A stretch of DNA of 64,000 nucleotides, taken from assembly GCF_963853765.1 (NCBI RefSeq), contig NC_088859.1:30008001-30072000 (forward strand), given 5' to 3'. Of this stretch, positions 1-23,600 are shown piece by piece (positions within the stretch are counted from its first letter, which is position 1; each line of letters opens with the position of its first letter). Source of the DNA: Magallana gigas (lineage: Eukaryota). Made by a program: the position numbers and the translations under genes. The notes beneath the pieces were generated by a model that worked only from the letters and a program-made list of their open reading frames with translations, was not told the DNA's origin and did not search any database.

Positions 1-3000
1 GGCCGTCTCCAACACCAGAATGGTGGCCACCCAGACCCGGCTCATCATCGAGGGGCTGGTCCAGGCCGGGGGGAGGCTCGCTGACATCCACCTCATAGGT
101 CACAGCCTGGGGGCCCACACCGCGGGATCCACGGGCAGACAAGTGGGCGGCAAAATTGGACGAATCACGGGTAAGGTGATGACAAGCCAAAACACTAAAA
201 ATCCCTAGGAATCCTTCGTGCCCAAATAATCGTGTAGTTTGCAAAAGTTGGTTTCAAAACTTAATTAACTCCCCTATATTTTATTCTATAAACAGATAAT
301 GTGGTCTGATCTGGTTTTTGGTTCACCTGAGCTGAAAGCTCAAGTAAGCTTTTCTCATCACTTTCTGTCCGGCGTCCGTCTGTCTGTAAACTTTTTACAA
401 TTTCGACTTCCTCTCAAGAACCACTGGACCATTTTCAACCAAACTCTGCCCTCTTTAAAGAGAAGTTAATTAGAATTATTGAAAATGTGTTGGTAGTTGT
501 CGAAAACCTTCTTCTCAATAACCATCTGACAAGAGAAGCTGAATCTTGTGTGGAAACATCCCCAAGTATGGTAGACTGCAACAAGGGGTCCCGTCTTTTC
601 ATAGAAATATATAGGGTAAATCTTTAAAAAGTTTCTTCTCAAAACCCATATTAGACAGGGAAAACTGAAACTTGTGAGGAAGCATCCTTAGAAAGTTGAG
701 ATTCAAATTTGTTAAAATCATGATCCCCAGGGGTAGGATGGGGCCACGATGAGGGGTCGGATTTTTGCAGAGGAATATATAGAGTATATCTTTAAAAATA
801 TTCCTCTTAGAAACCAATCAGGAAGGCTGAACTTGTATGGAAGCATCCTCAGATAGTATAGATTGTAATTTGTTTCAGATCATGATCCCTGGGGACAGGG
901 TGGGGCCCCAATTGGGGGCGAATTTTTGCATAGGAATATATAGAATAAAATCTTTAAAATTCTTCTACTAAAAACCATTTCCTTAGAAAAGCTGTAACTT
1001 TAGTAAAAGCAACCATAGATAGTGTAGATTCAAATAAGTCAAAATCCTCAGAAGTAGGGCGGGGCCCAATTTCGGGGTCCAATTTCACAAAGGAAAACAT
1101 TTTAAATTGATAAAAAAAACTTAAGTACCAGTCCATATTAAATTCAGACAAATGGTGATACATGTAGGTTCTCAGATTATGATGATATTTCACATACTGG
1201 TTTTTTATGGTCCAAATATAGTGTATGTAAAATAAAAATTAAATTCATGAAACGTTGCTATGGAAATCAGTTAAAGATAGTTCCCTTAGCAACGGAGCTG
1301 AATTTGCTCTATGGTTTTGGTATACTATCACCATTTCAGATGTTAAAATTTAATCTTTAAGAATCAATCTGATTAAACAAAATCTGATATCTTAAAGACA
1401 TTATATTATATACTATAATCATCACCAAAATAGATTAAATAGATAAAGGAATTTATTTCTACCGATCCTCAAAAGATAGGTCATTTTCAAATTTTGCTGA
1501 ATCAGCGTTTTAAGCAGTTTTTAGTCAATTTTAATTGAGTAAAGCAAAAAAAGTCAGATAAATATGCATGGTAAGTATATTCAAAATGAATAAATAGGAG
1601 ATGAAATAATTATATCTACTTTTATTTCCGTGGGCTCTTTCTTTAATATGCCCGTTGCTAGGCAACAAAAAATGGTTGTTTTTATACTGAAAATACAAAC
1701 AAATCCCTTTAAGAACACACATTTTAGAAGTTTTACTGCATAAATCAGATAAATGTTATGAAAAGATTTTTTTTCCACCAATTATAATATTTGTAGGAAA
1801 CAAGGTTGTGTTGTGTCCTTGACCCAAGGTCATGTGGACAAGTTCAAGGTCACTTAAATAAAAAGTGTCTGATCCATATATTTCTTTTGGAGTAACATGA
1901 TGATTAGGAATTTCTATATCACACAAAAACTGTTGATGGCCCGAGGTGTGACAAGACCTTGACTCAAGGTCATTTAGATAAGTTCAAGGTCACTTGAAGA
2001 AAAAGTGCATTATTTGTGTCCAGTGAATAGAAACTGGGGGAGTTTTCACTTCATACAATTTGTCAAAGATTGCAAAAGATCTGAATGTGTGTCATCATCT
2101 TGACCCAGGGTCATTTAGGCAAGTTCAATGTCATTTGTTTTAAACTATGCATAATATTTTCTTTGGGAAATGTATCAATACTATGTCACAATACCTCTAA
2201 TATCATGATATAATAGAATTGCGAAAATGTGAATTTTGCTAAATTGCCCTTTTTTCATTTTCTTTAACTACCAGTGGTTTGTCAGACCATTTACTGTCTG
2301 TTTTTTGACATTTTAACAATTTGTTTAACTTAGCACACCTGAATAGACCAATAGGTAATTGATATGCAGGTGATGGTAAGAATGTGATATCTGTTCAATA
2401 CCTTACATTTGGGCGCTTTCAATCATGAGCCAAATATTAAAATTTTGAACACATCGATCACTAAATCATGCAGAGCAATTGTCTTACAAGATTTTCAGTT
2501 CATTTTTATATATTTCTTGAAATAATTTGCAATTAAGGAGAAAAACTTATCTAATCCATTAGGCACAGTATTTTTTTTTAATAACCTATGTACATTTTTT
2601 GTTTGACATGAATTTAATTATATTATTATACCTGTGATTGAGCTATTTAATCCTATTAAAGAAAATATGAAAAACAAATTAAATTGAGCTTCCACATTTA
2701 ATTGTTCTTCTGGAGAATTTCAGCAAGTAGGAACTATGAGGATGATATTCATATGAAAATACATGGGGTTCAATATATCAGCATGGTTTTTGGTCAAAGT
2801 ATCAATTATGTATTAATTTTACATGTAAATTGTATTTAAATTACTACCCAGTGGTGTATTGGTCAACCGATACAATCATTATCAGACAATAATTTTACTT
2901 ATTATCGTACATAATATCTGAAGAGACTGTTCATGTAGATTATTCGTTAAAAATGGAGTCTTGCTCACCCCTCATCCCATTACACACAATCTTGTACATC

Positions 3001-4656
3001 AATTCAATTGAAATGATACCATGTTATCATAAAACAAGAATGAATTAACAGGGCTGGATGGTTGAGGTCATTGTAAGATAGTATTCACTGGTATTCTTAA
3101 AGGGCAGAGCTCTTTATAAAGATATTTAAAAAATACTGACGTTCACCAGCTGAAATTTAATGATTTTCTTTAGCTTAGCACGTCATATCTAAAAATTAAA
3201 GGTTACTAAGAGCTGATGAGTAATGTGTTAACCACCCAGCTTTCTTTTAAAATCTACAGATATTGTCACAATAAAAACACTTTGCATAAGTTATATACAT
3301 CTATGTATCAAACAATTTCAGTCCTTGTCACAAAATGAGTAATGTTTCTATCTCAGTCAATTATGTCATTCCTACTGAAATTCTGCAGCTGTTTCGGCCT
3401 TAGCAATGTTCAAAAGAACTGCATCCAAATCATCATCACTGATATCTGTGGAGGACGTTTTTTTCAATGCAGAAAGTCTTGAAAAAAAAGATGAGATTTG
3501 ACCAACAGCCAAATATTGGTTTGCACTGAATCTTTTTTCTCCATTTTCATTTTTAGCAACTCTCATGTTTTTAGCGACAACTGATGGATGTACCTTTGCT
3601 CCACTACTCTCTCCTTGCAAGAATATATCACTAAGATATGATTTCAAGTCATCTGAGAATCTAGCACTTTTTCTCTCTTTTTTCAAAGCCCAACCCATAT
3701 CAGACTGCACACACACTTGCTCAGTGACCCCTTCTCCGGTTTTAGAATATTTCAGAGTATCTTCTGATAGTGTACAACATGCATCCATCCATCTCATTTT
3801 TATATCATCATAAGATGACCTTGCTTGGAGCTGGTAAGTGTGATTGCCGATTAAGCAATGGTTTTGCATCTCACTGTATCTTGTGAAGATCTGGGTACAT
3901 CCTGCTTCAGGACAATTAAAAGCATGATCATCTGAAGAATCAACAACATCATTGCTCTCTTTGGGGTTTTGAATGTGCCCAACTGATCCAGATTTCAAAA
4001 CAAAATCAGATATAATTTCTAATTCTGCCAGGTCCTATAATTAAAACATGCAGTGGTTAGTCATGTATTTGAAAGATTTCCTTAATGTTTGAATTGCATT
4101 AATTAAAACTGTAAGAGTAGTTGAACTGGTTTGACTTCTAAAGCTTGATGTCATTATAAACATTTCAGTGTACTGTAATAAACAATCTGTGTGCTTAGTG
4201 CTGCACATACATTGTTACACTTACATTGTTTTCATGTTCAATAGGCAACTGCTTGCCTGTGCCAATATTGAAGGCCCTCCAAGTTGTTAGATGCTTTGGT
4301 TCAAACTTGACATTTGAAATCCTGGTTATGCCCTTTATTGGGCACTTAGCTGTAGAAGGAGGAAATCCCTGGAGCTTAACATGTGCTGCTTGACATCCAG
4401 TTGTTCCTTCATACAGGTCTATGGCAGACTTCATGTTGGCTGCTGTAAGGATGTTATATCCTGATGCGACAACTTTGCTAAACTTCCCTCTCATGTGGGC
4501 TATTTTAGCATCACAGTAGGACTTCCCACTTTGGGCCTCACTGTAATCGTAGCGGTCTATGAACACTCCTGAAATGAATTATATATATAAATATATATAG
4601 TATTCATGGTAAAGAAAGTAAACTTTTGACTGCATGATGCCTTGCTTCAATAAAGG

Positions 4657-4719
<63 letters not shown>

Positions 4720-7700
4720 GTCTTACTCATAAAATTAATTCATCTACAAAGCATTTACTATACTTAATCCATTTGCTGTGTCAGTTATTAGGTTACAAAT
4801 GCATATATATTTTTAATATATGACTTGGAGGATAAATAAAAATTATTTACCAGTGCGCCTACTAATGCCTGGTATGGCAAGCCATAGATTGCCGCAATGG
4901 TAGCACCCGGCATTATCACTCCGAATAAATGCCCTTGTTGTACTGGGAAGTTGCAGTTTCACATGATGAAGTGTGTCTTCCAAAAGACAGGCAACCGCTA
5001 ACCAGTCTTGACGCACTCCATCCAACATGTGAGCGAATGTTCTATGCTAAAAAACAAAAAAACTTAACATGAGTTTGTAATGCATTAAAAGATTGAGTAG
5101 ACCTAAAATTCTTTATATAACAATGTGTATTTTTATGCTGCATGCATGATTTCATAATGCATCACTACATTGTAAGTCATTTTATATTGATTTGCAAATG
5201 TACAATGTACATGACTTTTATTCAGATTGAACTGATTGTGTGTGCATGCTTATTAACCCATTGGCAAGGCTGCTTGGAAAGTAAAAATACAACTTATTGT
5301 CAAACAATATCATTTAATCCATCAAAAATCATGAGAAATCCTATAGCCATAGAATTACCACATTAAATTGTTCTCACTAATCTCACCTTTAAATTTGAGT
5401 TTTCATCCTTGTAAATGCACACAGACACGTGCCAATTTATGCCCTTCTGGCCATACCAGTCGCTCTGTTTTTCTCTAAATGTAATTGGTAAGAATTTCAT
5501 GGCCCAGTCCATAATAATAAGAATATCACCAGGCTGGAGATCTTGCAGTGTGTGTGTCCTAGCAGTATCCTGATTGATAGTTCTAATTATGTGGCTTTTC
5601 CATTGAAGAATCTTTGTTACCGCTGCATCAATATCCATAAACAATTCTTCTCTGGTGTTGGGGGAAAGATCTGTCAAATTAATCATTATTTTAAAATCAA
5701 ACTCAATCGAACAAAATTCAATATTTTTAGTATACACTCAGTGCCATGTTTCACTTTCAAATCTTATCAAATTGATAAGAATTATTCATTAATAGCAAAT
5801 TACCTGCGAGATTGCTCAGGATTTCCTTCAAATTTAAAACTGCTTTTGGAAGTAATTGGCAGCGGTCGCAACCAACATCATGTTGGTGGTCAGTACATGC
5901 TTGCTGGAAATGAATGTCAAGCGGATCACTTAGAGCATGGTTAATGCAATGATCACTGCAGTGGTCAGTCTGCATAGAAAGAGAAAAAATAATTGATTTA
6001 AATTAAATTACCTCAGTTAAGCAAGTCCATTATGAATAACAAAAATGGATCAAATCTGATATTATAATTTATTTAAAAAAGTCCCATTTAAACTTGCCAC
6101 TTAATTTTACATTGGTAAAGTGTAACAGTCATATTGAATATGACAGCAATAAAACATATTATTTTAATACATTGCAATTATATACCTGTTTCAAATGCAT
6201 TTTAAAATCTGTTTTCATATAAATTCTACTGGATGCCAAGGATTCTTTGCATTCCTTCAGTTCCATTAGCAATAATCCATCTGTTATGTACTTTTCCACA
6301 TCTACAATACAGTACATAATGAAGTCATAATACATGTTGTAATGTAATTATATTACCGATTATCACCGTAAGAGTAGAGGATATGAACGTCTTTACTGTT
6401 TGAAACACGCTTTTGGTTATGAGAATTTGTCAAAGATACATGTGCATTTAGCATTCCCTTGATTGGTGACATTTCCATCACATACCGTAAGTGTAAAAAG
6501 TCAATATCAAAGAACTATGGTATAAATTCTACAGGAAGCTGAGGAGAATTTAGCAATTTAATCTATATACACGTATTGTCTTTCATGAAAAATAAACTTT
6601 ACAAACCTGCAACTACTGATAGAAGCACATCATATGAGCTCTCTCCATCTGCTGTTATATTGTCCAGACCCTTCAGATTTGTGCGCCTTGAAGCGGGACA
6701 AACTCGAAGAATATGGAACAATGTAGACCTAGACAGAGGAATAAACTCTGTCTCTTCACAATATGCCAGATAGAGTTTGATCAGAGTTGAGTGCCAGACT
6801 GTTCTGACCACCTCTGGAATGGACACAATGCTGCCATCCTCTAGTCTCATCTCTTTAGTACCAACAGAGGAAACCTGTTTAATATAAGTTATATATACTA
6901 GTTAGGTCTTGCACTTTTTTGCTCTGCTACACATGTAATATCAATATTTAATTACACAATTTAAAGTATTATGAGTTCATGCATAAATGAAATTGCAAAA
7001 ATTACAATTGCACATGTTTGATTGTTTAATTACTGTAAACCAATTACTACCCCCATAATTTTTTTCTGGGGGGGGGGGGGGGAATGACCTCTTTAATCCC
7101 TGCAAACAAGTAGTCACATTTTTTTCACAGGCATGTTTGGCCGGTAACTGTATTCTAATAAGTATATATTAATAAAAGTTTAAACTTGTTTAAATGGTAC
7201 CATATCACTTTATGCAATCATTGGAACTCAGGAATATTTATCACACAAGGATAATACTTGGTTTATAGTACATTTATTTGATCATCATTCATGATCTGAA
7301 TTATTATAATTGAAATACATGAAATACATGTTATAATTATATTTTCATATTTTATTGAATAGCACTTAAGGAGTTCAATTGAAATGAATATATTAATTAA
7401 TCATTTTGCCAATGGTTTTGGTTAGAGAGAATCATGATTATTTTTGCAGACACAGAGAGCTGCCATACACAAAGTGAAATCATGAGTGAAACCTTAATTT
7501 GCATGACCTGATACAGATTTATCATTACATTGAGGTACATAATTGCAAAGAACTGCATGATACATACAAAACAATTAATAGATACCTGATGAAATGCTGG
7601 ATTGAAGATAAAATCCAGTGCATGGTCCAATTTCATGAGATCAATTTTCTTATGAAATACTGGTTTCTGTTTAGGAACCTCAGCACCTGTAATAAATGGA

Positions 7701-8406
7701 TTAAATGTAATTAACAAAGCTAATTCTCAACATGTTTTTACTCACAAGTTATTTGGGCACAAAATGAAGCAATCAAATTAAGGAATTAAAAAACCTAGAA
7801 ATATATATCAGTTTTCTAGCTAATAATGAATTACACTTATAATGTTCTTAAAGCACACATTGGCATGAATATAACACACACATTCAATACATGTGCAAGT
7901 CATAAAGTGATGAAAGTGAATTACTATACCTTCAGAATGTTCAACAGCATGTTTCCTTGCCTCATTTATAGCATGCATGGTGACTGAGGGAATGATCTGC
8001 TGAAGCTGTTTTTTTGTATGAGAGCAAGCAATCATGGACAACAGTCGTTTCTTAACAGCCTTGTCTGTGCTTTCACAGTACAGTTTAACAACAAGTTGAT
8101 CAAGTTTGCTAGAGCTTGTTTCTTGCTGCTGCTCTGGCTCGTGAATGAGCTTTAACAATTCATTTCCCTGTCCTGGAGCTATACCTAAAATAAATAAAAA
8201 ACTGTGAATATGGAGCACAAATATAATATATGAGAGACAAAGAGAAACAGAGAGACAAATATCAAGTCATTGTAAGATAGAGATATACATTTACTACTGC
8301 TAGTATGGATTTTATATATAAATGAATAAAATTTTTGAGAGAGAGAAAAAGAGACAAAGAAAGACAGATCTAAAGTCACCATAAGATAGAGAGATACTAC
8401 TACTAT

Positions 8407-8457
<51 letters not shown>

Positions 8458-8569
8458 TCTTGATTCACAGAGCGATAGGATATTATATGAATCAGTTAAA
8501 ATAAATATGAGAAAGAGAATCTTGATTCACAGAGAGATAGGATATTATATAAATCAGTTCAAAGTTAAA

Positions 8570-8628
<59 letters not shown>

Positions 8629-11600
8629 TGAGCCAATAAGAGAAANNNNNNNNNNNNNNNNNNNNNNNNNNNNNNNNNNNNNNNNNNNNNNNNNNNNNNN
8701 NNNNNNNNNNNNNNNNNNNNNNNNNNNNNNNNNNNNNNNNNNNNNNNNNNNNNNNNNNNNNNNNNNNNNNNNNNNNNNNNNNNNNNNNNNNNNNNNNTAT
8801 AATTAACTGTGTTACAAAAAAGAAATAAAACATACTCTCAAGAACTAAATTGACTGCTTCTGTGGCTTTTCTCTTAAGCAATCTTGTAGTGGAGGGCTTA
8901 AGGCTGTCCAGCCTCTGATGTACTTTGAATTTAAGTGGGCTCATCTTCCCATGTCCAAGCAAAGTTACAGCCTTATTGAAAATATCTAGAGTGTTGTTAT
9001 TTTCTTCACTCCAAGATGAGGATTGTGATGATGGTTGAGAACCAAGAAGCTGTCAAAATTAAGAAAATCAGTTTTACAACCAAAAATCTATAACGAGAGC
9101 TATATTTTTACTACAACTACTGAATAAGTGTAATTTAGTCAACATTGTTAACAAATTTTAAACAGTTGCATACATATATATTAACTTGATTTAAACTAAC
9201 ATCCATTTACCTGGTAGGTTTTATCATAAATATGTTGTTAGTACATGTCAAGTGAATATTGCCCAATAAAAATTAAACAAGTAATTTATGTCGTACATTT
9301 TATTCATATAATAAATTATCAGTGTTTTGATAGTAAAAGTTAATTAAATGATGAGTTGATTTTGCAATGCTTTATAAGTACACCACGACCAAAGTTGTAA
9401 TCAGTTCAAGTATAGTCATCACAGATACTTACACCCACTGAATCTTCATCAGAAAATATCTCCAGGTGATCATCAGTTTTCCAAATTTCATTGTTTTCTT
9501 CCTGTATAAAAATAAAACTTTCAATTAAAATGCACCATTATTTTATCAATCAGGTTCTAATTAAAATCATGAAATACATAATCAAAAAATAAGGAAAGCT
9601 GATTATCTTTACATGCATATTATTGATTGTCAGCGATTTAACCAAATTACACATACAGTGATATAGGATAAAATAAATCATCATTGATGATTTTAAAATA
9701 AAAATATCCATGTGTACCATATCTACATTAACTTCCTTAGTGTCCTCAATCTTTATTGGTGTCAATACATCTGGATGTGTACACTTTGGTGGTAACTGTA
9801 AAATATAATAATTAACAACTACATGTAAAACTTAATGTATCCAAAGCAATTTAATCTAATTTAACCACATTCAAACTATAAATGAAATAATTGCATATAT
9901 ATATATATATATCCATTCCTCTTATATTACTGTGTCAACTTTTCATATCTTACTTCATTCTCAATCTTGTTCGAATTTTCCATCTCCTTGTACAATTCAA
10001 ATCTACATCTCCGACAAATGCCTGGACAGTAAAAGAAGACTTTGAAGTTAATTTAATGGCAAGATTTGCTTATTAAATTAAAGGTTAAAAAAAAATTTAA
10101 AAAGATATAAGTAAATGTAAATATATTGAGAGCATATTACAGCATTTTCTGAAATAACAACAATATTTACATAACACTATACATCTATAATCAATCTTAA
10201 CACAATCTGCACAAATTAATCTTGAAAGCCCTTTATTTAATTTAGGGAAAACAATTTTTAAAATTAATATTTTATCTTGAACAGTGTTGAGAGTTTAAAA
10301 AAATAGACCCCCTGGGGGATTTGATCCTGGTAATATTAAAAGAACATCACTTTTTTTTTTAAATTGAGAGTGAATTATCCTGAAACTAACCTGATCCAAC
10401 AGGCACTAACTCTCCTTTGTGCTCAAGGATGAATCCAGACATTTGTGGTGTCACTGGCCGTTCCATCTTTCCATTGTGAGAATGGTCTGGATATGAACAC
10501 TTCACACTGTGTCTTTTCCATTTTACACCGAGTTTTGCACGATGATTAGGGCATATATTAAAATTATTCAGAACAGGTGAAAATAATCCAATTCTGAGCA
10601 GAAGTAAATGTCCCTCAGATGGAATGCTGTCCTGTCCAAGTTTTAAAGACCTAAGATGCCCACTCATTGGCGGATCCAGAGGGGGGGTTCCGGGGGTCGG
10701 AACCCCCCCTTTCTCTGGGACATATGAATTTTTTTGAAAGCGTTTAATGCCTATTTAAAGACAATTTTTCCCATTTATAATAGAAATACTGTAATTATCT
10801 CAAATAAATGCTTTTAAAATTGCTTATTTAAATAATTTCGTACTACGTCCCATAATTTTGTTCTTATATTAAAAAAAACCCTATCGATTTTTTATCGAAA
10901 TAAAGTACATTGTACTCCCCTTTAGCATCCGGTGTTTACTACACTGAGTAAACATGTGGAAAATTAAAGAAAAAATACATAAAACTAAGCAGTATTATAG
11001 ATTTATAATAACATTTACAATGTATTTTCTACTCTATTTCTTTTTTTTTTAAAATCGAATAATATATAGTTCGTACAGTTTTGAACTGACATTAGTCATC
11101 GAGTAAAACGACTTAACGGTTCAAATACAAGTACACGCATTCGTTTTACTTTAAAATGCCGCTTTCAAATGTATTGTTTAGTTAATTAACCTAAATAATT
11201 ATAATAGATGAGTTTTACTTCGTTTCATACGAAAAATACAAAGAAAACTACATGACCCGCTTATGCGGGTTATGCTATTTTTCTGGAATGCTAGCTACCT
11301 TCATACCCACTTTTAAACACAAAAGAAAGCCTTTTTTGTTTTGTTTCCAAGAATCGGAAATTCTGTTACAAACATACCTTGTAAATGGTTTATATGTAAA
11401 CCATTATGAAAATGCACAACTTTTCAATTTTTTTAAAAAAATGCTCGCGTCTGTACCAGTCCGGATGATGTAGCGCACCCATTACAGAGGTCACATCAAG
11501 TTCCCTGGGACGACAATTGCTTTTACCATTGTATTACACACGTACCATCTTTTCAGCAGATAAATTATCCCCATTCTTTTGTCATATCATGTCATTTAGA

Positions 11601-14600
11601 CCTTTATTTAAGAAGGCAATCAATAGAAATCAAAATCGATAAATAGTTCAGAATTTAAAAACATCAAAGACATAAAAAAATTTACCAAAATATCCATTTA
11701 TTAATAGTTTGTTATAATTAGTCTGAGTTGTGTTTTGTTTCTTAGTGTTTCTTTTCTATCAAGCATAGACGCACTGAATTTATCATTGCTGGAAAGTTAG
11801 GTTTCTTAAGGCTACCCTTAGCAAAAACAAATGCTATATTTGCATTGAAATTTGATTTTATTTGTCTTGAAAATGCATTTAACATTGAAAGAGCATTTAT
11901 TTTTGATTGAAAACATTTCAACAGGCTAAAAACCATTTATTTAGAAGCGATTGAATTAGTATTGTTTTGAGAAATACAGATTCAATGCATTTATTTTGCA
12001 TTTATTCTGGATTGATATGATGTCATACAAATAAAATTCCAAACATCAAGTGCTCCCTTTGAGAAATTGTTGATTGAAATTGTAGTTCTTTTCTGGAGCA
12101 TTTATTTGAAAATAAATGGTAATTAAGATTGCTGCATGTAGAAATGTTAGCATTATTTATCATTGACCATTCGTGTAACTGGTCATTAGTGTTGGCTGTT
12201 CTCAGCAGGAGTTATGATGCTGATAAAAACCACGTGGTTACTTCTACGTCACATTCTCATCAAATTCAAACTTACAGGCTTTAGAGTAGCCATCTTTGAT
12301 AAAAGTGATTTGCAATTTGTCATCCTTTCCTATGGACAAAACAGTACAATCATGCCATGGCAAAAAGTACTGTTGAGTTTTAAAATGATGGAGACAGGAG
12401 TGTTGTATAGTAATGTGGTAGACAAGTGATATTGGAGATTGCATGATGGCAGAATGATTCTGAAGAAGATGCCATAAGATGGATCTATTGTTTTCTCTGG
12501 AAGTAAGTTTTTATTATGTTTGTCAATTCATTCTTTGTAATTTTGTATATTCTATAATGTTTAACTGATATATCATACAATATTAAAAATACCCTTTAAT
12601 AATTAAAAAAAACCCCAACTTGTATATGTAAAAAGATGCAAAGATAAATCAAAAAGTCAAAATCAGCACACATATATATAAGCACAGTAAATTATTTTGT
12701 GCACGTGAGTCTGTTTATAGAAGATATTATTGATGGGGTAAACATATAGAATATGACATCGGACAGTTTTTTCTTAGTCAACATAATATAGGTCAACAAG
12801 CAAGTCAATGTATGATGGACTCAGCTGCTATCTATCTTCTCAAGTTTCACCTGGAAATTAGGGGGGGGGGGGTTATCTGCTGCTTAATCTGCTCAAGTGG
12901 GTGTTTATCATATATGCAATCTGCAAGTGCCTAGTTATAAACAAATAATACTAATCAAGATTATTTGAATTTAAAACAATCAGTGTTCTGTCATTGAACA
13001 TTTGAATGAATGATTTTATTTTCAAAATCATTTACACACAAAACTTAATTCTTTTAAAATGTTTTAATATCTTTCAGAGTACATGAACACTAAATATGAA
13101 AAAATGCCGTTAGATCCAATTCCGCTGAAGACCTTCAACAAGGAAATACAAAGCAAAATCGGAAACCTGAGACATGAGACGAAAGGAAAAGCAACACTTG
13201 TTTAATGAAGTGCCTTAATTTGTGGATAAATGTGATAGATCTAATGTGGGACAAAATTTGGAGTCAAGTTTATACATGCATATAGTTTGTTTTAATATTC
13301 ACTGGATTTAAATTTAACGCTGGATTAAACAGAAAACTCTACAAAAGACATTCCAGATAAGTATATCTGTACAAAAGAATAAAGATAGATTTGATTATTT
13401 CACTATTTGCCAATTTGGGGCATGTACATTATGCAGTGAGACATGTTACTGATAAATATATATACACATGTATTAAATACTGTGGAAACCAAATGTATTC
13501 TCATATGTCAAGAAAAGGGTATTCTTTCTTTTTTAATGATTATATAATATTTGTAGGGCCAAGTTTGATTTTTGTTAGAAGAATTTTTATAAATTTTTTG
13601 GTCACTAGATTTTTTTTATCTACTATTCATTATATTTTGTAGCCTCTTTAATGATTAGAGATTTGGAGTAAATATGCATTTAGTTTCTCTTATTTTGTGA
13701 GTTTTATTGCATCACATCAATGTTTTCATTTGTATTACTTTTTAATTTTTTTGTGATGTCAAATCAATCTTTTAATGACATCATATAAATGCTTTCTTTT
13801 ATAACATATGTATTGATTGATTTTGCATTTTTCTGTGATGTCATAAAAATCCTTTATCTCATTTGCATTTTCCGGCCAAATCCAGCCACGTTCAATCAAA
13901 AATAAATGCAAAATAAATCTAAAACCAATGTTAAATGCTTTTTCAATGGTTTTTTTCTCATGCACCTCAGTTAAGAGTTAAGTAGATTCCTCTACTAATC
14001 AAAATCCAATGGAAATTCAATGCTCAGAAAATAACTCAAAAATAAATGAAGATTCAATGGATTTGTTTTTGCTAAGGGTAGGTATAATGCAAATCTTCCT
14101 TACCTAAACCAAAAAGGCAAAACACTCAATAATGCAATGCACTCTAATGTTGATATAGATGTGAAATAGATAGTGATGAGATAAATGTTTATTAAATACA
14201 GTTGTATACGCACGGAAAACGTTCAAAAAGTCCTTGTTTATAGACAAATGATGAATTTTGCACCTATTGATTTTCATCAAATGGAACCCCCCCTTTTCCA
14301 AATTGCTGGATCCGCCTCTGCCACTTACATCTTTTGAACAGTCAGAAATTTGAACAAATTCTCTTTCAGATGGGAAAAACGCTGATAATCCGCATGTGAT
14401 GTTCGAAAATGCAGAAAAACTGCATTTGTTTTTAAATGCATAATTTGGATGACAGTCGTCTGCCATTTTTAATGGACGGAATCTTGTTTCTAATTCAGAA
14501 GAGTGTCACAAAGGGAGATAATCTTAAGGATTAAACTCCTATTGTTTAGACAGTTGTAAAAATCTTTTAGTAATAGAGCCCACGGAATTTTAATATGAAA

Positions 14601-16302
14601 TAGATAGTTTATCATTTAAATGAATATATTACACACATGTCTTGTTAGCATGTATCTGGTCTTTGTAAAAAATTAAACCCAAAGCTACTATGTATACTAT
14701 AGAAATAATAGGCATTGCAGAAAAAAGTCAGCATACTTTAAAATGCTCTCTTTACTAAACCGCTTAAGCAAATTCCTTGAAATTTTAAACATATCATTTT
14801 TTAATAAAGTCCAATCCAAATTACACTGTAAAAGTTTATTTCATGATATACCATGTATCACATTTTTTAAAGTTTGTCTGGTTTTTATATGGACTGGTAC
14901 TTAAGTGTTTTAAGGTATGGTTTTACTTATATACAAGCATTTTGACAAATTGTGAATTCTATAGATTTGTTAAGTACACTTTGGCCCCTGGACAATTCCT
15001 TGGCCTCGCAAGGGGTTCAAAATTTGATTTATAGGTTTATATCTTTTATAAAAAGTTGTTTAAGAAATTCTTGAGAACTGCAATGCTCAACATGTAATAT
15101 AGCTATTATATCACCGTGTTACAAAAGGGGCTTAATAATAAACAATTATAAAATATCCAAGGGGGAAATTCAACTATTTTATACAGAATATGTTCAACTA
15201 CATATTTTGTACAAAAAACTCCATAAAGCTGATTTTATTATGGCTGTTGTTGCTCATGTGAGCTATGTGACCCATGGGCCTCTTGTTTTAACAATATTTT
15301 CTAGGACTGGATCCAGCTAAACCAGCCTTTGAAAACCACCCAGAAGGAGTAAGAATAGATTCCTCGGATGCTGTTTTTGTGGACATTATCCATACTAATG
15401 GAGCGCCCATACGTCTTGGTGGTGCTGGCTTAATGGAGGTGTCAGGTCACGTGGATTTCTACGTCAATGGAGGAGAGAGACAACCAGGATGTCCCAACCT
15501 TGTCACCGGGACGTTTGAACAGTTATTCAGTCGCAATCTATCTGGTAAAAAGAATGTATTATTTTTATCGATTCTTTTTCAACTGAATGTCGGTGTTATG
15601 TTTATTACAAACTTGCAGTGGTATATTATATAATTGTTTTTTCATTATTTGCCGTTGTTTTTATGGAATAATGTTCGTGTGCATTGAATATTGGTGACAT
15701 TCTCATACGAATGTGTTCTTATATAATACAATTATTCCTTCACTATCAGGTGGTGTTTTCGATTTATATTATATTTAAGTTAGTTTAAGATAAGGAGTAA
15801 TTTTTTTGTTACATGTTGTATGTCCTTTTTTCCATGATGAAAAATTAAAAAACAAAAACAAAAACAAAAAAACCAGATCACAAAAATAGTCATGTATGAA
15901 AATAGAATCATCATCTTATAAAAAATCACAATATATAAATGTAAAACATAATCACAAAATATGATAAAAAGGAACCTTTTTATCGATCATGAAATAAAAC
16001 CACATTAAAGTAAAACAAGAGGCCCAACGGCCACACAACTCACCTGAGCAAAAATAGCCACAAGTTCAATTATAAAATCAGCTTTATCTAACTAAATAAA
16101 AACTATCTGAAATTTAGTAGAGAATGTCTTGTTTAAAAAGGATTTATTATTCACATTTTTCACCACATATACCTATGCTAAACATCGGGTGCCTTTTGAT
16201 GTATCAGTGATCGTTGTTTCAACAATTTAATAATCAAAGTACTGAAGTACTGAAACCGGGCTCTTTTGGTGTGTCTTTATGCATATTGTGTTGTAAAGAC
16301 TG

Positions 16303-20608: not shown

Positions 20609-23600
20609 ATGGTTAACAATATGACGTCACAGATAGCAATCTTGTTGACTTTTGTAGGTAAGAATTAGTAAATATTCATGATCATCAGAAATTAAGTGGC
20701 TAAACTCTGTATATCAACAATTCATTGAAAGTAAAGTTATCTTAAACTATCATGTTCGATAATATTAATTCGCTGAGCAAATTGTATTTTTTAAATGGAT
20801 GGCTGAGTTACACATTCATTTTTTTATGAGTTTGGATTTTTTTTTTCGTTATCAAAAGCCGGTGTATGTACGACAAGTACAACGGAAAACCCGTATGAAA
20901 ACAGAACAGTGTGTTACAAATATGTGGGCTGTTTCAACAACCTCCCTCCCTTTGACAACGCTGCTTACGACTTGCCACGCTCGCCCGAGGAGATAGGGAC
21001 AGAGTTTTTGCTTTTTACACGGAGGAATCCATCAAATCCAGACCGTCTGGATTATGTATCCCAATCCTTTGTCCTCAGTTCTCAGTTCCAGAGCAGTGTC
21101 CAGACCAAGATCATTATCCATGGATTCGCTAACACAGTCAAAACCACATGGTTATACAATATGAAAGATGCATTTTTAACAAAGGTAAAAAAGGGCGTTC
21201 GTTATTAGTGTAATTTTTCTTAAAAATTAAATATATTATTAGTTTCAGTTGAAAAAACTTCAATTACAATGAACATTTCTTATTATCAGATCTTTATCAT
21301 AATAAAAGACATTTAATATTGATAAGAAACTATAACACACGGTATTTCGGTCTTTCTATGTGTCTTATCAAACGGTTGAAATCGTAAACGCGTGGAATAA
21401 ATTATTCTATCTAAACTGAGAAGTTGTTTTATATTTCGACGAAGGTTTTTATTGCTAAATAAATTCCTCAACAAATTAAATTATTGTGTGTATTACCTTG
21501 GGAAAAAATCATCTTTACATCAGAAACATAATAAATACTCTGTTGAACAAAAAAGGGGGGTGGCATATTTGAATTTTTAAAGAAACTGTGTTTTTTGTGA
21601 AAGTCAAAACAATTTATAAAAAAGAAATAGAATAAAATACATTTCAAAATATAGAAATATACATATCTCGTTTCCATTTTTAATACCTTTGTAGTACTTC
21701 ATTTATGAAATTTGAGTTTTGAGATGTACCCTTTTAAAACCCAAACGACCTAATCTAGTATATTAGTACATTATGTGCAATATATTTTTACTCAGTACAT
21801 ATTGCTAGTTACAATTCACCTATAGAAGCCAAACATAATTCCATTTAACTAAGACGGTTTAAATATGGGATGAAATAAACCTTCATATAATTATCAAACT
21901 GGTAAATTGTAAATCCGCTTCTCTACGATACGCTATACTTTTATACTGATACGCTAACGAGTGTACAAGTATAGCGTATCGTTGATGATAAGCTGTATAC
22001 AAGTATAGCGTATCGTAGAGGAGCGGATTTACTAGTCTGATTTTAACTGGTTGGTATTTATCAATAACAACATCACTCTGTGCCACATCCCTCCATAACT
22101 TTTCCTTGTTCGAGGCCTCTCCTACAAAGGAAAAGCTCCAGTTTCTATGTCAGTGTATATTATGATACATTTAATTGACAGGGAGACTACAACGTGATCG
22201 TTGTGGCGTGGGGTGCGGGAGCCGCGGCCCCCGACTACAACCAGGCCGTCTCCAACACCAGAATGGTGGCCACCCAGACCCGGCTCATTATCGAGGGGCT
22301 GGTCCAGGCTGGGGGGAGGCTCACTGACATCCACCTCATAGGTCACAGCCTGGGGGCCCACACCGCGGGATCCACGGGCAGACAAATGGGCGGCAAAGTT
22401 GGACGAATAACGGGTAATGTGATGACGAAATCGGAATATATGATGTAATTATTTGCTCACGGTTATTGTGCTTGTTTATGGTCGTGTGGTGTTTGGGAGT
22501 TCATGTCCTCTATATTGGATTCAATGTATCGACAATTGGTGTCCAACCCGATGTACTCTTTTTAAATAATATTTACATTCAGATAAAGGAAAGAATATTA
22601 TAGGCAAAGGGGGGGGGGGGGTCTAACCGTCACATTTAAGTAACTTTAAAGATACTTAAAGTAAACTTTGCCTGGTTCTCATTTTTATCAAAATATACAG
22701 ATATTATTACATAATAGCGTGTTTGATACATATTTTGAAGGTTTTGCATTACAATGATGTGAATTTTAATATATCATTATAAAATTATGTGAAGTTTAAT
22801 AAGAGGTAATTTGTAACAAAGCTCATGCAAATCAAAACTTATATTTAAAATTATTTTTTAAGTAAACGTGAATGTAAGGATGTTAGTTCGGTAAAGGAAG
22901 CATAATTTATTAATTTTTCGTTTGAACATAAAGCACTATTTCCTTTAAAAAGGATTGTTTTCAAAAATTTATTTGATTTAAAATATGATATTTGTATGAG
23001 CAATATACTTGATAGTGAGAATCCTGATGTAAATATCAGATATTTTGTTTTAATTGGTACAATTAAAACAACTAAGGCGAGAAACCCCTTACAGTGGTTA
23101 CTTTGACATTGTCCAGGACTGGACCCAGCTGAGCCAGCGTTTGAAAACCACCCAGAAGGAGTAAGAATCGATCCCTCGGATGCCGTTTTTGTGGACATTA
23201 TCCATACAAACGGAGCACCCATACGGCGGGGCGGGGCAGGCTTAATGCAGGCGTCAGGTCACGTGGATTTCTACGTCAATGGAGGGGAGAGACAGCCGGG
23301 ATGTCCTAACCTTGTCACCGGGACCTTTGAGCAGCTGTTTAGTCATAACGTTTCAGGTAAAATAGAGGTAATAGTAAAGAAGTTTCGATGGTCGTAGACA
23401 TTTTTAGGCTGTATTGATCTCCGTTAGAAGAAGAGTTCTCAGACTGTATAAAATATAGTGAAATACCTTAATTCAAAAGGTAAGATATATGGGTTTTTTT
23501 TTTCTTCCTGAAACAAAAGTTTCTTGCTAAAATAAATATCTTACAATTCTAGGTAGATTTAATGGTTATTTTGGTGACCATCCATCATCCTTAATAAAGA

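What the first reader, a model, noticed from the sequence alone, without database searches (positions are those of the whole stretch)
3372..14466. Intron-rich (14-exon) 1078-aa Sola3-like transposase, open throughout except for one clean insertion
Seen: 14 minus-strand exons join by canonical GT-AG junctions with consistent phases into 3237 nt, without stops or frameshifts, once the exon-1 insertion and one TSD copy are removed. The protein has three candidate catalytic Asp motifs (DWAMK, SDNA, GKSYCD), a C2H2-like finger and Cys/His-rich N-terminal clusters. Known (recalled): Sola3 elements use TTAA targets and have long TIRs, but are usually described with GAG..CTC ends. Here the ends are GTA..TAC. 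Inference: this is a recently active, possibly undescribed Sola3 lineage with unusual termini and host-gene-like intron density.
Basis: partly seen in the sequence, partly recalled or inferred. Interest (0 to 1): 0.72.

Follow-up and report, generated by a model that had tools for sequence, protein, structure and literature searches.

The report
Intron-rich Sola3 transposon in oyster
This is one of four near-identical copies of a 10-kb cut-and-paste DNA transposon of the known Sola3 group in an oyster genome; its transposase gene has 13 introns, is transcribed and spliced, and this copy is broken by another transposon that landed in exon 1.

Summary
Fourteen minus-strand exons (14466 to 3372) join by GT-AG into 3237 nt without stops once a 3,661-bp insertion in exon 1, counted with one AGTGG copy, is removed. 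The N gap (8646-8797) lies in intron 5. RNA contigs join exon 6 to the end of exon 5, and relatives without that intron read straight across the junction.

The gene sits in a 13,776-bp element (1125-14900) with 28-bp imperfect TIRs and TTAA on both sides. Three more copies have the same ends and unrelated flanks, and are 97-100% identical to the window in the exons. One has all 14 exons open. A paralogous empty site shows TTAA is duplicated on insertion.

Pfam finds nothing. The catalytic blocks match the published Sola3 rows (Sola3-1_HM, C. remanei CRE_08425). An AlphaFold model of a relative has an integrase-like RNase H fold (Z 11). D638, D722 and D763 are invariant family-wide.

RNA contigs from three studies, partly backed by polyA reads from a fourth, confirm introns 5-13.

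GTAC ends are not peculiar to this element: three Sola3 lineages in this genome have them. Whether Repbase already holds the family could not be tested.

Verdict: a new member of a known kind, moderately interesting. The scan noted this stretch before as a nested stack (s1-364124), and another Sola3-like element elsewhere in this genome (s1-369118).

The parts
1121..1124 (.). TTAA target-site duplication, left copy
   Evidence: Paralogous empty sites carry a single TTAA.
1125..1152 (+). Terminal inverted repeat at the 3' end of the gene (28 nt, starts GTACCAGTCCATAT)
   Evidence: The same end is found in the three other copies.
1125..14900 (-). Whole Sola3 element, 13,776 bp with the nested insertion and about 10.1 kb without it
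1153..3371 (-). Non-coding 3' part of the element (3' UTR and subterminal region), shared by all four copies
   Evidence: 2,156-2,247 nt aligned, about 2% mismatches. RNA contigs run past 3300 (table 8).
3372..4034 (-). Exon 14 with stop codon 3372-3374. It holds a C2H2 finger (3840-3914) and a conserved C-terminal three-helix module (GWAL...RFS...QISSFFSRL).
   Evidence: The intron 13 joint is seen in RNA.
4225..4568 (-). Exon 13, with the third catalytic Asp D763 (codon 4510-4512) in GKSYCD
   Evidence: Introns 12 and 13 are confirmed by RNA.
4851..5046 (-). Exon 12, with the second catalytic Asp D722 (codon 4915-4917) in RSDNAGCYH
5387..5670 (-). Exon 11, with the first catalytic Asp D638 (codon 5507-5509) in MDWAMKFLP
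5804..5969 (-). Exon 10, a Cys/His zinc module just upstream of the catalytic core (C..HC...C..H.H...C..C)
6186..6301 (-). Exon 9
6607..6874 (-). Exon 8
7586..7686 (-). Exon 7
7930..8184 (-). Exon 6
8185..8835 (-). Intron 5, which holds the assembly gap 8646-8797 and GA/CT microsatellites
   Evidence: RNA contigs splice it out (table 7). The gap letters were not read from other copies.
8836..9049 (-). Exon 5
9433..9501 (-). Exon 4 (phase 0-0, weakly supported)
   Evidence: No RNA or homology test was made.
9718..9795 (-). Exon 3 (phase 0-0, weakly supported)
9954..10021 (-). Exon 2 (ICRRC motif)
10391..10659 (-). Exon 1, second part (Cys/His-rich N-terminal domain)
10660..14320 (.). Nested non-coding transposon in exon 1, counted with one AGTGG copy. 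Its ends are CAGAGGCGGATCCAG / CTGGATCCGCCAATG. It holds a further nested element marked by perfect 21-nt inverted repeats at 11812-11832 and 14061-14081.
14321..14466 (-). Exon 1, first part, with ATG at 14464-14466
14467..14872 (-). 5' non-coding region of the element (presumed promoter and 5' UTR)
   Evidence: The function is inferred.
14873..14900 (-). Terminal inverted repeat at the 5' end of the gene
14901..14904 (.). TTAA target-site duplication, right copy

Best explanation
The stretch is one copy of an autonomous-type Sola3 DNA transposon in an oyster genome. It inserted at a TTAA and was later disabled by another transposon that landed in exon 1.

The element carries one gene of 14 exons. 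The encoded transposase of 1078 aa has these parts:
- an N-terminal Cys/His domain;
- a helical region;
- a Cys/His zinc module;
- an RNase H-like DDD catalytic core with D638, D722 and D763;
- a C2H2 finger;
- a C-terminal three-helix module.

By analogy with other DDE/D transposases, the protein would bind the GTAC-initiated 28-bp terminal repeats, cut the element out and join it into a TTAA that is duplicated on insertion.

Shown here: the gene structure, its splicing in RNA, the copies, the ends, the TTAA duplication, the fold and the conserved residues. Inferred: binding, cutting and joining, and that the family is still able to move.
For: - Gene model: 14 exons, GT-AG throughout, 3237 nt open.
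- RNA: contigs from three runs of three studies show eight of the nine introns 5-13 each, and together all nine. PolyA raw reads from a fourth study show junction reads at four of them, one to six reads each.
- Copies: four, each ending TTAA|GTACCAGTCC...GGACTGGTAC|TTAA with unrelated flanks. Exons are 97-100% identical, apart from exon 4 (94%, C1) and exon 3 (96%, C6). Non-coding divergence is 1.6-2.0%.
- One other copy has all 14 exons open and exon 1 uninterrupted.
- Empty site: the C10 copy sits in a repeat whose uninterrupted copies carry a single TTAA at that point.
- Sola3 identity: the blocks KFLPITFREKQSDWY, GQKGINWHV, RSDNAGCYH and RYDYSEAQSGK line up with Sola3-1_HM and CRE_08425 in the supplement of Majorek et al. 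2014 (PMC3985635). RSDNAGCYH is identical in 9 of 9 residues to the C. remanei row.
- Fold: a relative's model (pLDDT 89.8) has the order b1-b2-b3-a1-b4-a2-b5-a3. It matches retroviral integrase cores at Z 10-11 (rmsd 2.6 A over 130-140 residues) and Mos1, IstA, TnsB and Hermes at Z 8-8.6.
- The three Asp are invariant in 60 aligned family members.
- Selection: dN/dS is 0.11 against a sister subfamily with the same ends and the same exon borders.
Against: - No transposition event was observed directly. No allelic empty site or insertion polymorphism was tested.
- This lineage has Ser where 95 of 103 relatives have Asp (GKD to GKS). It also has Ser where 97 of 104 have Glu (NEG to ASG). Reduced or altered activity is therefore possible.
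- Reads and contigs at 95% identity cannot say which of the four copies is transcribed.
- Introns 1-4 were not tested with RNA.
- The Sola3 reference comparison was made by eye on about 130 published residues, not by a scored search.
Confidence: 0.88

Rival explanations
1. The family is a relic. Its transposase is catalytically weakened by the GKD-to-GKS and NEG-to-ASG changes. The four copies were moved in trans by another Sola3 lineage with similar GTAC ends, or they no longer move at all.
For: Two positions that are acidic in more than 90% of relatives are Ser here. Related Sola3 lineages with TTAA|GTAC ends and open frames coexist in the genome. Three of the four copies are broken.
Against: The same GKS state is found in a bivalve-wide clade of long proteins (P0055, P0049, P0091, P0093, P0103), so it is old and tolerated. 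The three invariant Asp are kept. dN/dS against the sister subfamily is 0.11. Within the family dN/dS is 0.3-0.6, not 1. The TIR of the other lineages differs after the first 4-14 bases.
Confidence: 0.15
2. It belongs to another TTAA-targeting superfamily (piggyBac or Kolobok), not Sola3.
For: It has a TTAA duplication and a DDD/E RNase H fold. In one tree of Majorek et al. the Sola groups sit next to piggyBac (file 8).
Against: No exon matches Pfam PF13843 or any transposase model. The ends are GT..AC, not the RR..YY given for Kolobok (PMC9587614). The sequence blocks match the Sola3 rows and not the Sola1 or Sola2 rows of the same alignment.
Confidence: 0.03
3. It is a domesticated host gene with many introns, copied by segmental duplication.
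For: The intron density is host-like, the RNA is spliced and polyadenylated, and the protein is under purifying selection.
Against: Similarity between copies stops exactly at TTAA on both sides, and the flanks are unrelated. The ends are inverted repeats. A paralogous empty site has one TTAA. Three of the four copies are broken. More than 80 related places exist in the genome.
Confidence: 0.02

Closest known systems
Sola3 group of the Sola superfamily (Bao et al. 2009; reference Sola3-1_HM of Hydra; clade E.13 of Majorek et al. 2014)
   Same: The catalytic blocks around all three Asp, a 4-bp duplication, TIRs, and size and TIR length within the published Sola range (2-9 kb, some above 15 kb; TIRs 11-1124 bp; PMC10741241). 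Neither has a Pfam model.
   Different: The gene has 13 introns, against 2 in the exon 6-14 region of a second Sola3 family in the same genome, and against a single 660-680-aa frame there in three others. GKD is replaced by GKS and NEG by ASG. The ends begin GTAC; the termini of the reference families could not be read here.
piggyBac
   Same: A TTAA duplication, short TIRs, a DDD triad on an RNase H fold, and Cys/His modules.
   Different: There is no sequence match to PF13843. The ends are not CCC..GGG (recalled). The best structural neighbours listed were integrases, mariner, IstA and Hermes; piggyBac was not among the 50 rows. Seamless excision is untested.
Kolobok
   Same: A TTAA duplication, and multi-exon transposase genes common in bivalves.
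   Different: [quoted passage not shown] Here the ends are GT..AC and the sequence after the second Asp reads D-N-A-G-C-Y-H.
Intron-bearing transposase genes (recalled: P element, Ac, En/Spm). Tc1-like elements with spliceosomal introns in molluscs are known here only from a title in a reference list (Puzakov et al. 2020, in PMC10294476).
   Same: The transposase mRNA needs host splicing.
   Different: Thirteen introns in one transposase frame is at the high end. No alternative or tissue-specific splicing was seen here.

Membership tests
Sola3 (Sola superfamily) | Catalytic-core sequence signature of Sola3 transposases | tested here: met
   By-eye alignment to the two Sola3 rows in supplement file 5 of PMC3985635. 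Identities: 7/15 and 7/15 in the KV[LI]P...Q block, 5/9 and 5/9 in the GK.G..HV block, 6/12 and 9/12 around SDNA, 7/14 and 6/13 around SE..GK. The Sola1 and Sola2 rows do not fit. It was not a scored search.
Sola3 (Sola superfamily) | DDD triad on an RNase H-like fold | tested here: met
   D638, D722 and D763 are invariant in 60 relatives. The spacing is D-83-D-40-D. The model of a relative places them on b1, at the end of b4 and in the helix after b5. Z is 10-11 to integrase cores. Catalysis itself is not tested.
Sola3 (Sola superfamily) | 4-bp target-site duplication (TTAA for Sola3, recalled) | tested here: met
   TTAA lies on both sides of four copies and of a sister-subfamily copy, C8. 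In the distant family, one of three copies has it on both sides and the two others only at the 5' end. It is single in paralogous empty sites. The held paper states only '4-bp TSDs' (PMC10741241).
Sola3 (Sola superfamily) | Terminal inverted repeats with group-specific termini | tested here: inconclusive
   A 28-bp TIR with 3 mismatches is present. The published Sola3 termini could not be read, because Bao et al. 2009 and Repbase are not held.
piggyBac | Match to the DDE_Tnp_1_7 (PF13843) transposase domain | tested here: not met
   No Pfam family for any of nine exons at E up to 1. The 120 listed homologues carry no Pfam domain.
Kolobok | [quoted passage not shown] | tested here: not met
   The ends are GT..AC in all copies. 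There is no CxxH or DxxH after D722, which reads DNAGCYH. Criteria are from PMC9587614.

The most novel reading that the evidence does not exclude
This is a Sola3 lineage that is still able to move in living oysters. It gained at least six spliceosomal introns (5-10) after it split from the other Sola3 lineages of the genome, so its transposase supply depends on host splicing. If so, it would be the first Sola element with a realistic route to an activity assay, and a second TTAA-specific cut-and-paste system besides piggyBac and Kolobok.
Probability: 0.3. Interest if true: 0.6.

Novelty: new member of a known kind. Interest (0 to 1): 0.4.

Why it matters
To my knowledge (recalled, not checked here) no Sola transposon has been shown to move in an experiment. 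The group also has no Pfam model, so its genes are annotated as 'uncharacterized protein' in bivalves, corals, anemones and amphioxus. A profile of this family hits 8,622 protein clusters at E up to 1e-10.

This family offers natural copies with exact ends, a proven TTAA duplication, a transcribed and spliced 14-exon gene, and one uninterrupted frame. That makes a direct activity test possible.

It is also a clean case for how introns accumulate in a selfish gene. Two introns are shared with a distant Sola3 family at the same position and phase, and at least six are not.

For genome annotation, it warns that intron-rich 'host-like' genes in oysters can be transposases.

Tried and rejected
- Pfam on nine exons: nothing but noise.
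- PDB sequence search with the family profile: only weak C2H2 hits and one weak Ku70 SAP hit, in a C-terminal part that the window protein lacks.
- Rfam on 1-16000: nothing. Tandem repeats in the 3' region: none.
- Exons were searched apart by reference, and contiguous frames of relatives (L033-L035) stood in for it. The joined frame was built only inside scripts, to count stops and number residues.
- A tree with Sola1, Sola2 and Sola3 could not be built. The only reference letters are about 130 residues in a paper's supplement, and they were not typed into tools.
- Bao et al. 2009 and Yuan & Wessler 2011 are not held.
- Empty site for the window copy: both flanks are themselves high-copy repeats that end near the insertion, so no paralogous empty site was found. 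The C10 copy gave one instead.
- MITEs: seven places share a 47-bp Sola3-like end, but the sequence left of TTAA is conserved too. They are parts of a larger repeat, not simple MITEs.
- The third GTACCAGTCC, at 11453-11462 inside the exon-1 insertion, shares only the 10-mer with the TIR and has no TTAA. It is taken as chance.
- TIR search by inverted repeats in L033-L035 gave nothing clear.
- Exon-14 model against PDB: best Z 5.7, with homeodomain and HTH-like three-helix bundles, including the SETMAR and Mos1 DNA-binding domains, at Z about 5. This is below the tool's noise level and is only a hint.
- Intron 5 was left out of all copy comparisons, so that the gap letters were not read from other copies.
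Full report
**What is there**

On the minus strand, 14 exons run from the ATG at 14466 to the TAG at 3372-3374. I placed every border with short anchors. I then read the splice sites and translated exon by exon with the split codons. All 13 introns are GT..AG, the phases agree, the exons sum to 3237 nt, and there is no internal stop.

Exon 1 is split by 3,661 bp (10660-14320, counted with one of two AGTGG copies). Three results show that this is an insertion:
- In the copies on contigs C1 and C10, the two halves of exon 1 are contiguous with one AGTGG.
- Mussel and amphioxus homologues align straight across the junction.
- The inserted element's family has at least 349 candidate places, some 100% identical, and loses similarity exactly at 14320.

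The insertion has no long frame and holds yet another element marked by perfect 21-nt inverted repeats.

**The assembly gap**

The N run at 8646-8797 lies in intron 5, between the exon 5 end at 8836 and the exon 6 start at 8184. I did not read its letters from other copies, and I left intron 5 out of all copy comparisons.

Two independent results show that nothing coding is hidden there:
- RNA contigs in two runs from two studies continue from 8184 directly into the reverse complement of the last 30 nt of exon 5 (table 7).
- Relatives that lack this intron read ...CESIAPGQ... in one frame, where the window has LE, a split-codon S, then IAPGQ.

**The element**

The gene lies in a 13,776-bp unit, 1125-14900. 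The two ends share GTACCAGTCCATAT, then CAGACAAA, giving 28 nt with 3 mismatches. TTAA lies outside each end.

Searches of the whole genome with each end found three more copies, on C1, C6 and C10. The genome is 564 Mb in ten large contigs. Sequencing runs that hold this DNA are labelled oyster.

All four copies read TTAA|GTACCAGTCC...GGACTGGTAC|TTAA, and their flanks are unrelated. The copies measure 9.9, 10.6, 12.2 and 13.8 kb. The differences are nested insertions and small deletions.

For the C10 copy I found paralogous empty sites. It sits in a palindromic repeat whose uninterrupted copies read ...attcatTTAAgttttctatat... with one TTAA. C10 has that TTAA on both sides of the element. So TTAA is a true target-site duplication.

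**State of the copies**

- C1 copy: all 14 exons without indels or stops, with GT-AG kept.
- C6 copy: a different insertion in exon 1 and three one-base gaps.
- C10 copy: a frameshift in exon 1 and a truncated exon 14.
- Window copy: open apart from its exon-1 insertion.

Against the window, non-coding divergence is 1.6-2.0%, dS is 1.5-2.0% and dN/dS is 0.3-0.6.

A sister subfamily (C3, C8) begins with the same TIR bases, has the same exon borders for exons 1, 2 and 5-14, and differs by dS 0.88 with dN/dS 0.11. The protein has therefore been under strong purifying selection while the lineage diversified.

**Transcription and splicing**

Six RNA runs hold 38-67% of the sampled words of 3300-8640. 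Exons make up 45% of that stretch.

I laid three contig runs from three studies and one polyA raw-read run from a fourth. The contig runs give joints at 4033/4224, 5046/5387, 5670/5804, 5969/6186, 6301/6607, 6872/7584 and 7684/7928. Each has CT..AC on the plus strand, and all fall at the predicted borders within the stated cut tolerance. Single contigs also carry 4224-4567 next to 4850-5048, which is the joint for intron 12. The polyA raw reads show one to six junction reads at four of these joints.

With the exon 5/6 junction above, 9 of the 13 introns are confirmed. Exons 3 and 4 are phase 0-0 and weakly conserved, so they are the least certain part of the model. At 95% identity the reads cannot be assigned to one of the four copies.

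**What the protein is**

Pfam gives nothing for any exon.

Because the joined model may not be searched, I used relatives in the same genome in which the region of exons 5-13 is a single 660-680-aa frame. One of them found 202 homologues, all 'uncharacterized' and without Pfam domains. They come from oysters, mussels, a pearl oyster, corals, an anemone and amphioxus.

A profile of 60 members hits 15,208 protein clusters at E up to 0.001, 8,622 at 1e-10 and 2,476 at 1e-30. Atlas neighbours are unnamed clusters from Mollusca, Cnidaria and Rotifera.

The link to a named family comes from the supplement of Majorek et al. 2014 (PMC3985635). It prints the RNase H core of Sola3-1_HM and of C. remanei CRE_08425 as clade E.13. 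The window's blocks line up with both rows:

| Window block | Sola3-1_HM | CRE_08425 |
|---|---|---|
| MDWAM | KDYCQ | MDWSQ |
| KFLPITFREKQSDWY | KVLPSKFREGQKEYF | KVIPMQSLEPQSDFY |
| GQKGINWHV | GKKGMSLHV | GKSGISVHV |
| RSDNAGCYH | KSDNASSYH | RSDNAGCYH |
| RYDYSEAQSGK | RYDYNEPCRGK | SFTFSEAQGGK |

The Sola1 and Sola2 rows of the same alignment do not fit. I made this comparison by eye on short blocks. It is not a scored search.

**Fold and catalytic residues**

An AlphaFold model of the relative's residues 300-680 has mean pLDDT 89.8 and pTM 0.87 (alignment A2; model). It shows the strand and helix order of an RNase H-like core.

Foldseek and the wide structural search both put retroviral integrase catalytic cores first (Z 10-11, rmsd 2.6 A over 130-140 residues). 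They are followed by Metnase and Mos1, IstA, TnsB and Hermes at Z 8.1-8.6.

In the 60-member alignment the invariant acidic residues are the D of DWAMK, the D of SDNAGCYH and the D of CD. In the window protein these are D638, D722 and D763, with spacing D-83-D-40-D.

Two other strongly conserved acidic positions are changed in this lineage. GKD is GKS (Asp in 95 of 103 relatives), and NEG is ASG (Glu in 97 of 104). The same GKS state marks a clade of bivalve proteins, so it is old. I could not measure distances in the model, so taking D763 as the third catalytic residue rests on invariance and on its place in the helix after strand 5.

**Other modules**

- Exon 10 carries a Cys/His cluster whose Cys and His are invariant or nearly so in the family.
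- Exons 1-2 carry a Cys/His-rich N-terminal domain conserved in mussel and amphioxus proteins.
- Exon 14 carries a C-x4-C-x12-H-x5-H finger whose four ligands are invariant, with weak profile hits to C2H2 fingers.
- A well-predicted three-helix module follows the finger. Its best structural matches are homeodomain-like and transposase DNA-binding domains at Z about 5, which is within noise.

**Introns in context**

A second Sola3 family of about 9.8 kb has at least six copies and ends TTAA|GTACTGCTCC...GTAC|TTAA. It has exons 6-11 fused in one 424-aa frame, and exons 13-14 fused. It does have introns at exactly the window's intron 11 (phase 0) and intron 12 (phase 1) positions.

Three further lineages have the whole exon 5-13 region in one frame.

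So two introns are old within Sola3, and introns 5-10 are absent from four other lineages in this genome (family A gave no exon-5 match, so intron 5 is unscored there). Gain in this lineage is the more economical reading, but loss in the others is not excluded.

The same comparison shows that GTAC ends with TTAA are the rule for oyster Sola3 elements, not a peculiarity of this one.

**Surroundings**

Both flanks of the window copy are themselves high-copy repeats. I confirmed the nesting but did not test the lipase reading.

**Verdict**

The Sola3 reading is supported, and so is the mobile nature of the element. The 'unusual termini' and 'undescribed' parts are not supported or not testable.

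It is a new member of a known kind. It is of moderate interest for its intron load, its verified splicing, its proven TTAA duplication and the presence of an uninterrupted copy.

Noticed in passing
window 10660-14320: The element that broke exon 1 belongs to a high-copy, non-coding family with at least 349 candidate places, some 100% identical. Its ends are CAGAGGCGGATCCAG / CTGGATCCGCCAATG and it makes a 5-bp duplication (AGTGG). It looks recently active, but its superfamily was not determined.
   Followed up: partly
window 11812-14081: Perfect 21-nt inverted repeats (CTACCCTTAGCAAAAACAAAT and its complement) bound a 2.27-kb unit nested inside the exon-1 insertion. The unit has many AAATAAATGC-like subterminal repeats.
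   Followed up: no
window 596-1118 and 14903-15290: Both flanks of the Sola3 copy are repeats. The left one has more than 5,000 candidate places, often in tandem arrays. The right one is a unit of about 390 bp with more than 2,400 candidates, and its similarity starts 2 nt inside the TTAA.
   Followed up: partly
window 15296-15500 and 23108-23312: This pair is an 88% identical paralogous segment within the window.
   Followed up: no
G000:C8:42013816-42023586; L047-L052: A second Sola3 family of about 9.8 kb has at least six copies, 95-99% identical. It ends TTAA|GTACTGCTCCGTGTAAGAGTCAGGCAG...GTAC|TTAA and has long open frames. It shares two intron positions with the window gene.
   Followed up: partly
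L053-L056 (G000:C4:37925100, C1:66838540, C1:65026940, C1:26667540): A 47-bp Sola3-like terminus (TTAAGTAACAGTCCACAT...) is embedded in a repeat longer than 5 kb, with at least seven copies, of which the four fetched are 97-99% identical. The sequence left of the TTAA is conserved too, so the terminus travels as part of a larger unit.
   Followed up: partly
L037:1-291 and L057-L060: A palindromic MITE-like repeat of about 275 bp, followed by a TA microsatellite, occurs in many copies up to 100% identical over a 208-bp stretch. One copy hosts the C10 Sola3 insertion.
   Followed up: partly
window 11453-11462: A third exact GTACCAGTCC lies inside the exon-1 insertion. It has no TTAA and no further similarity to the TIR, so it is probably chance.
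   Followed up: yes
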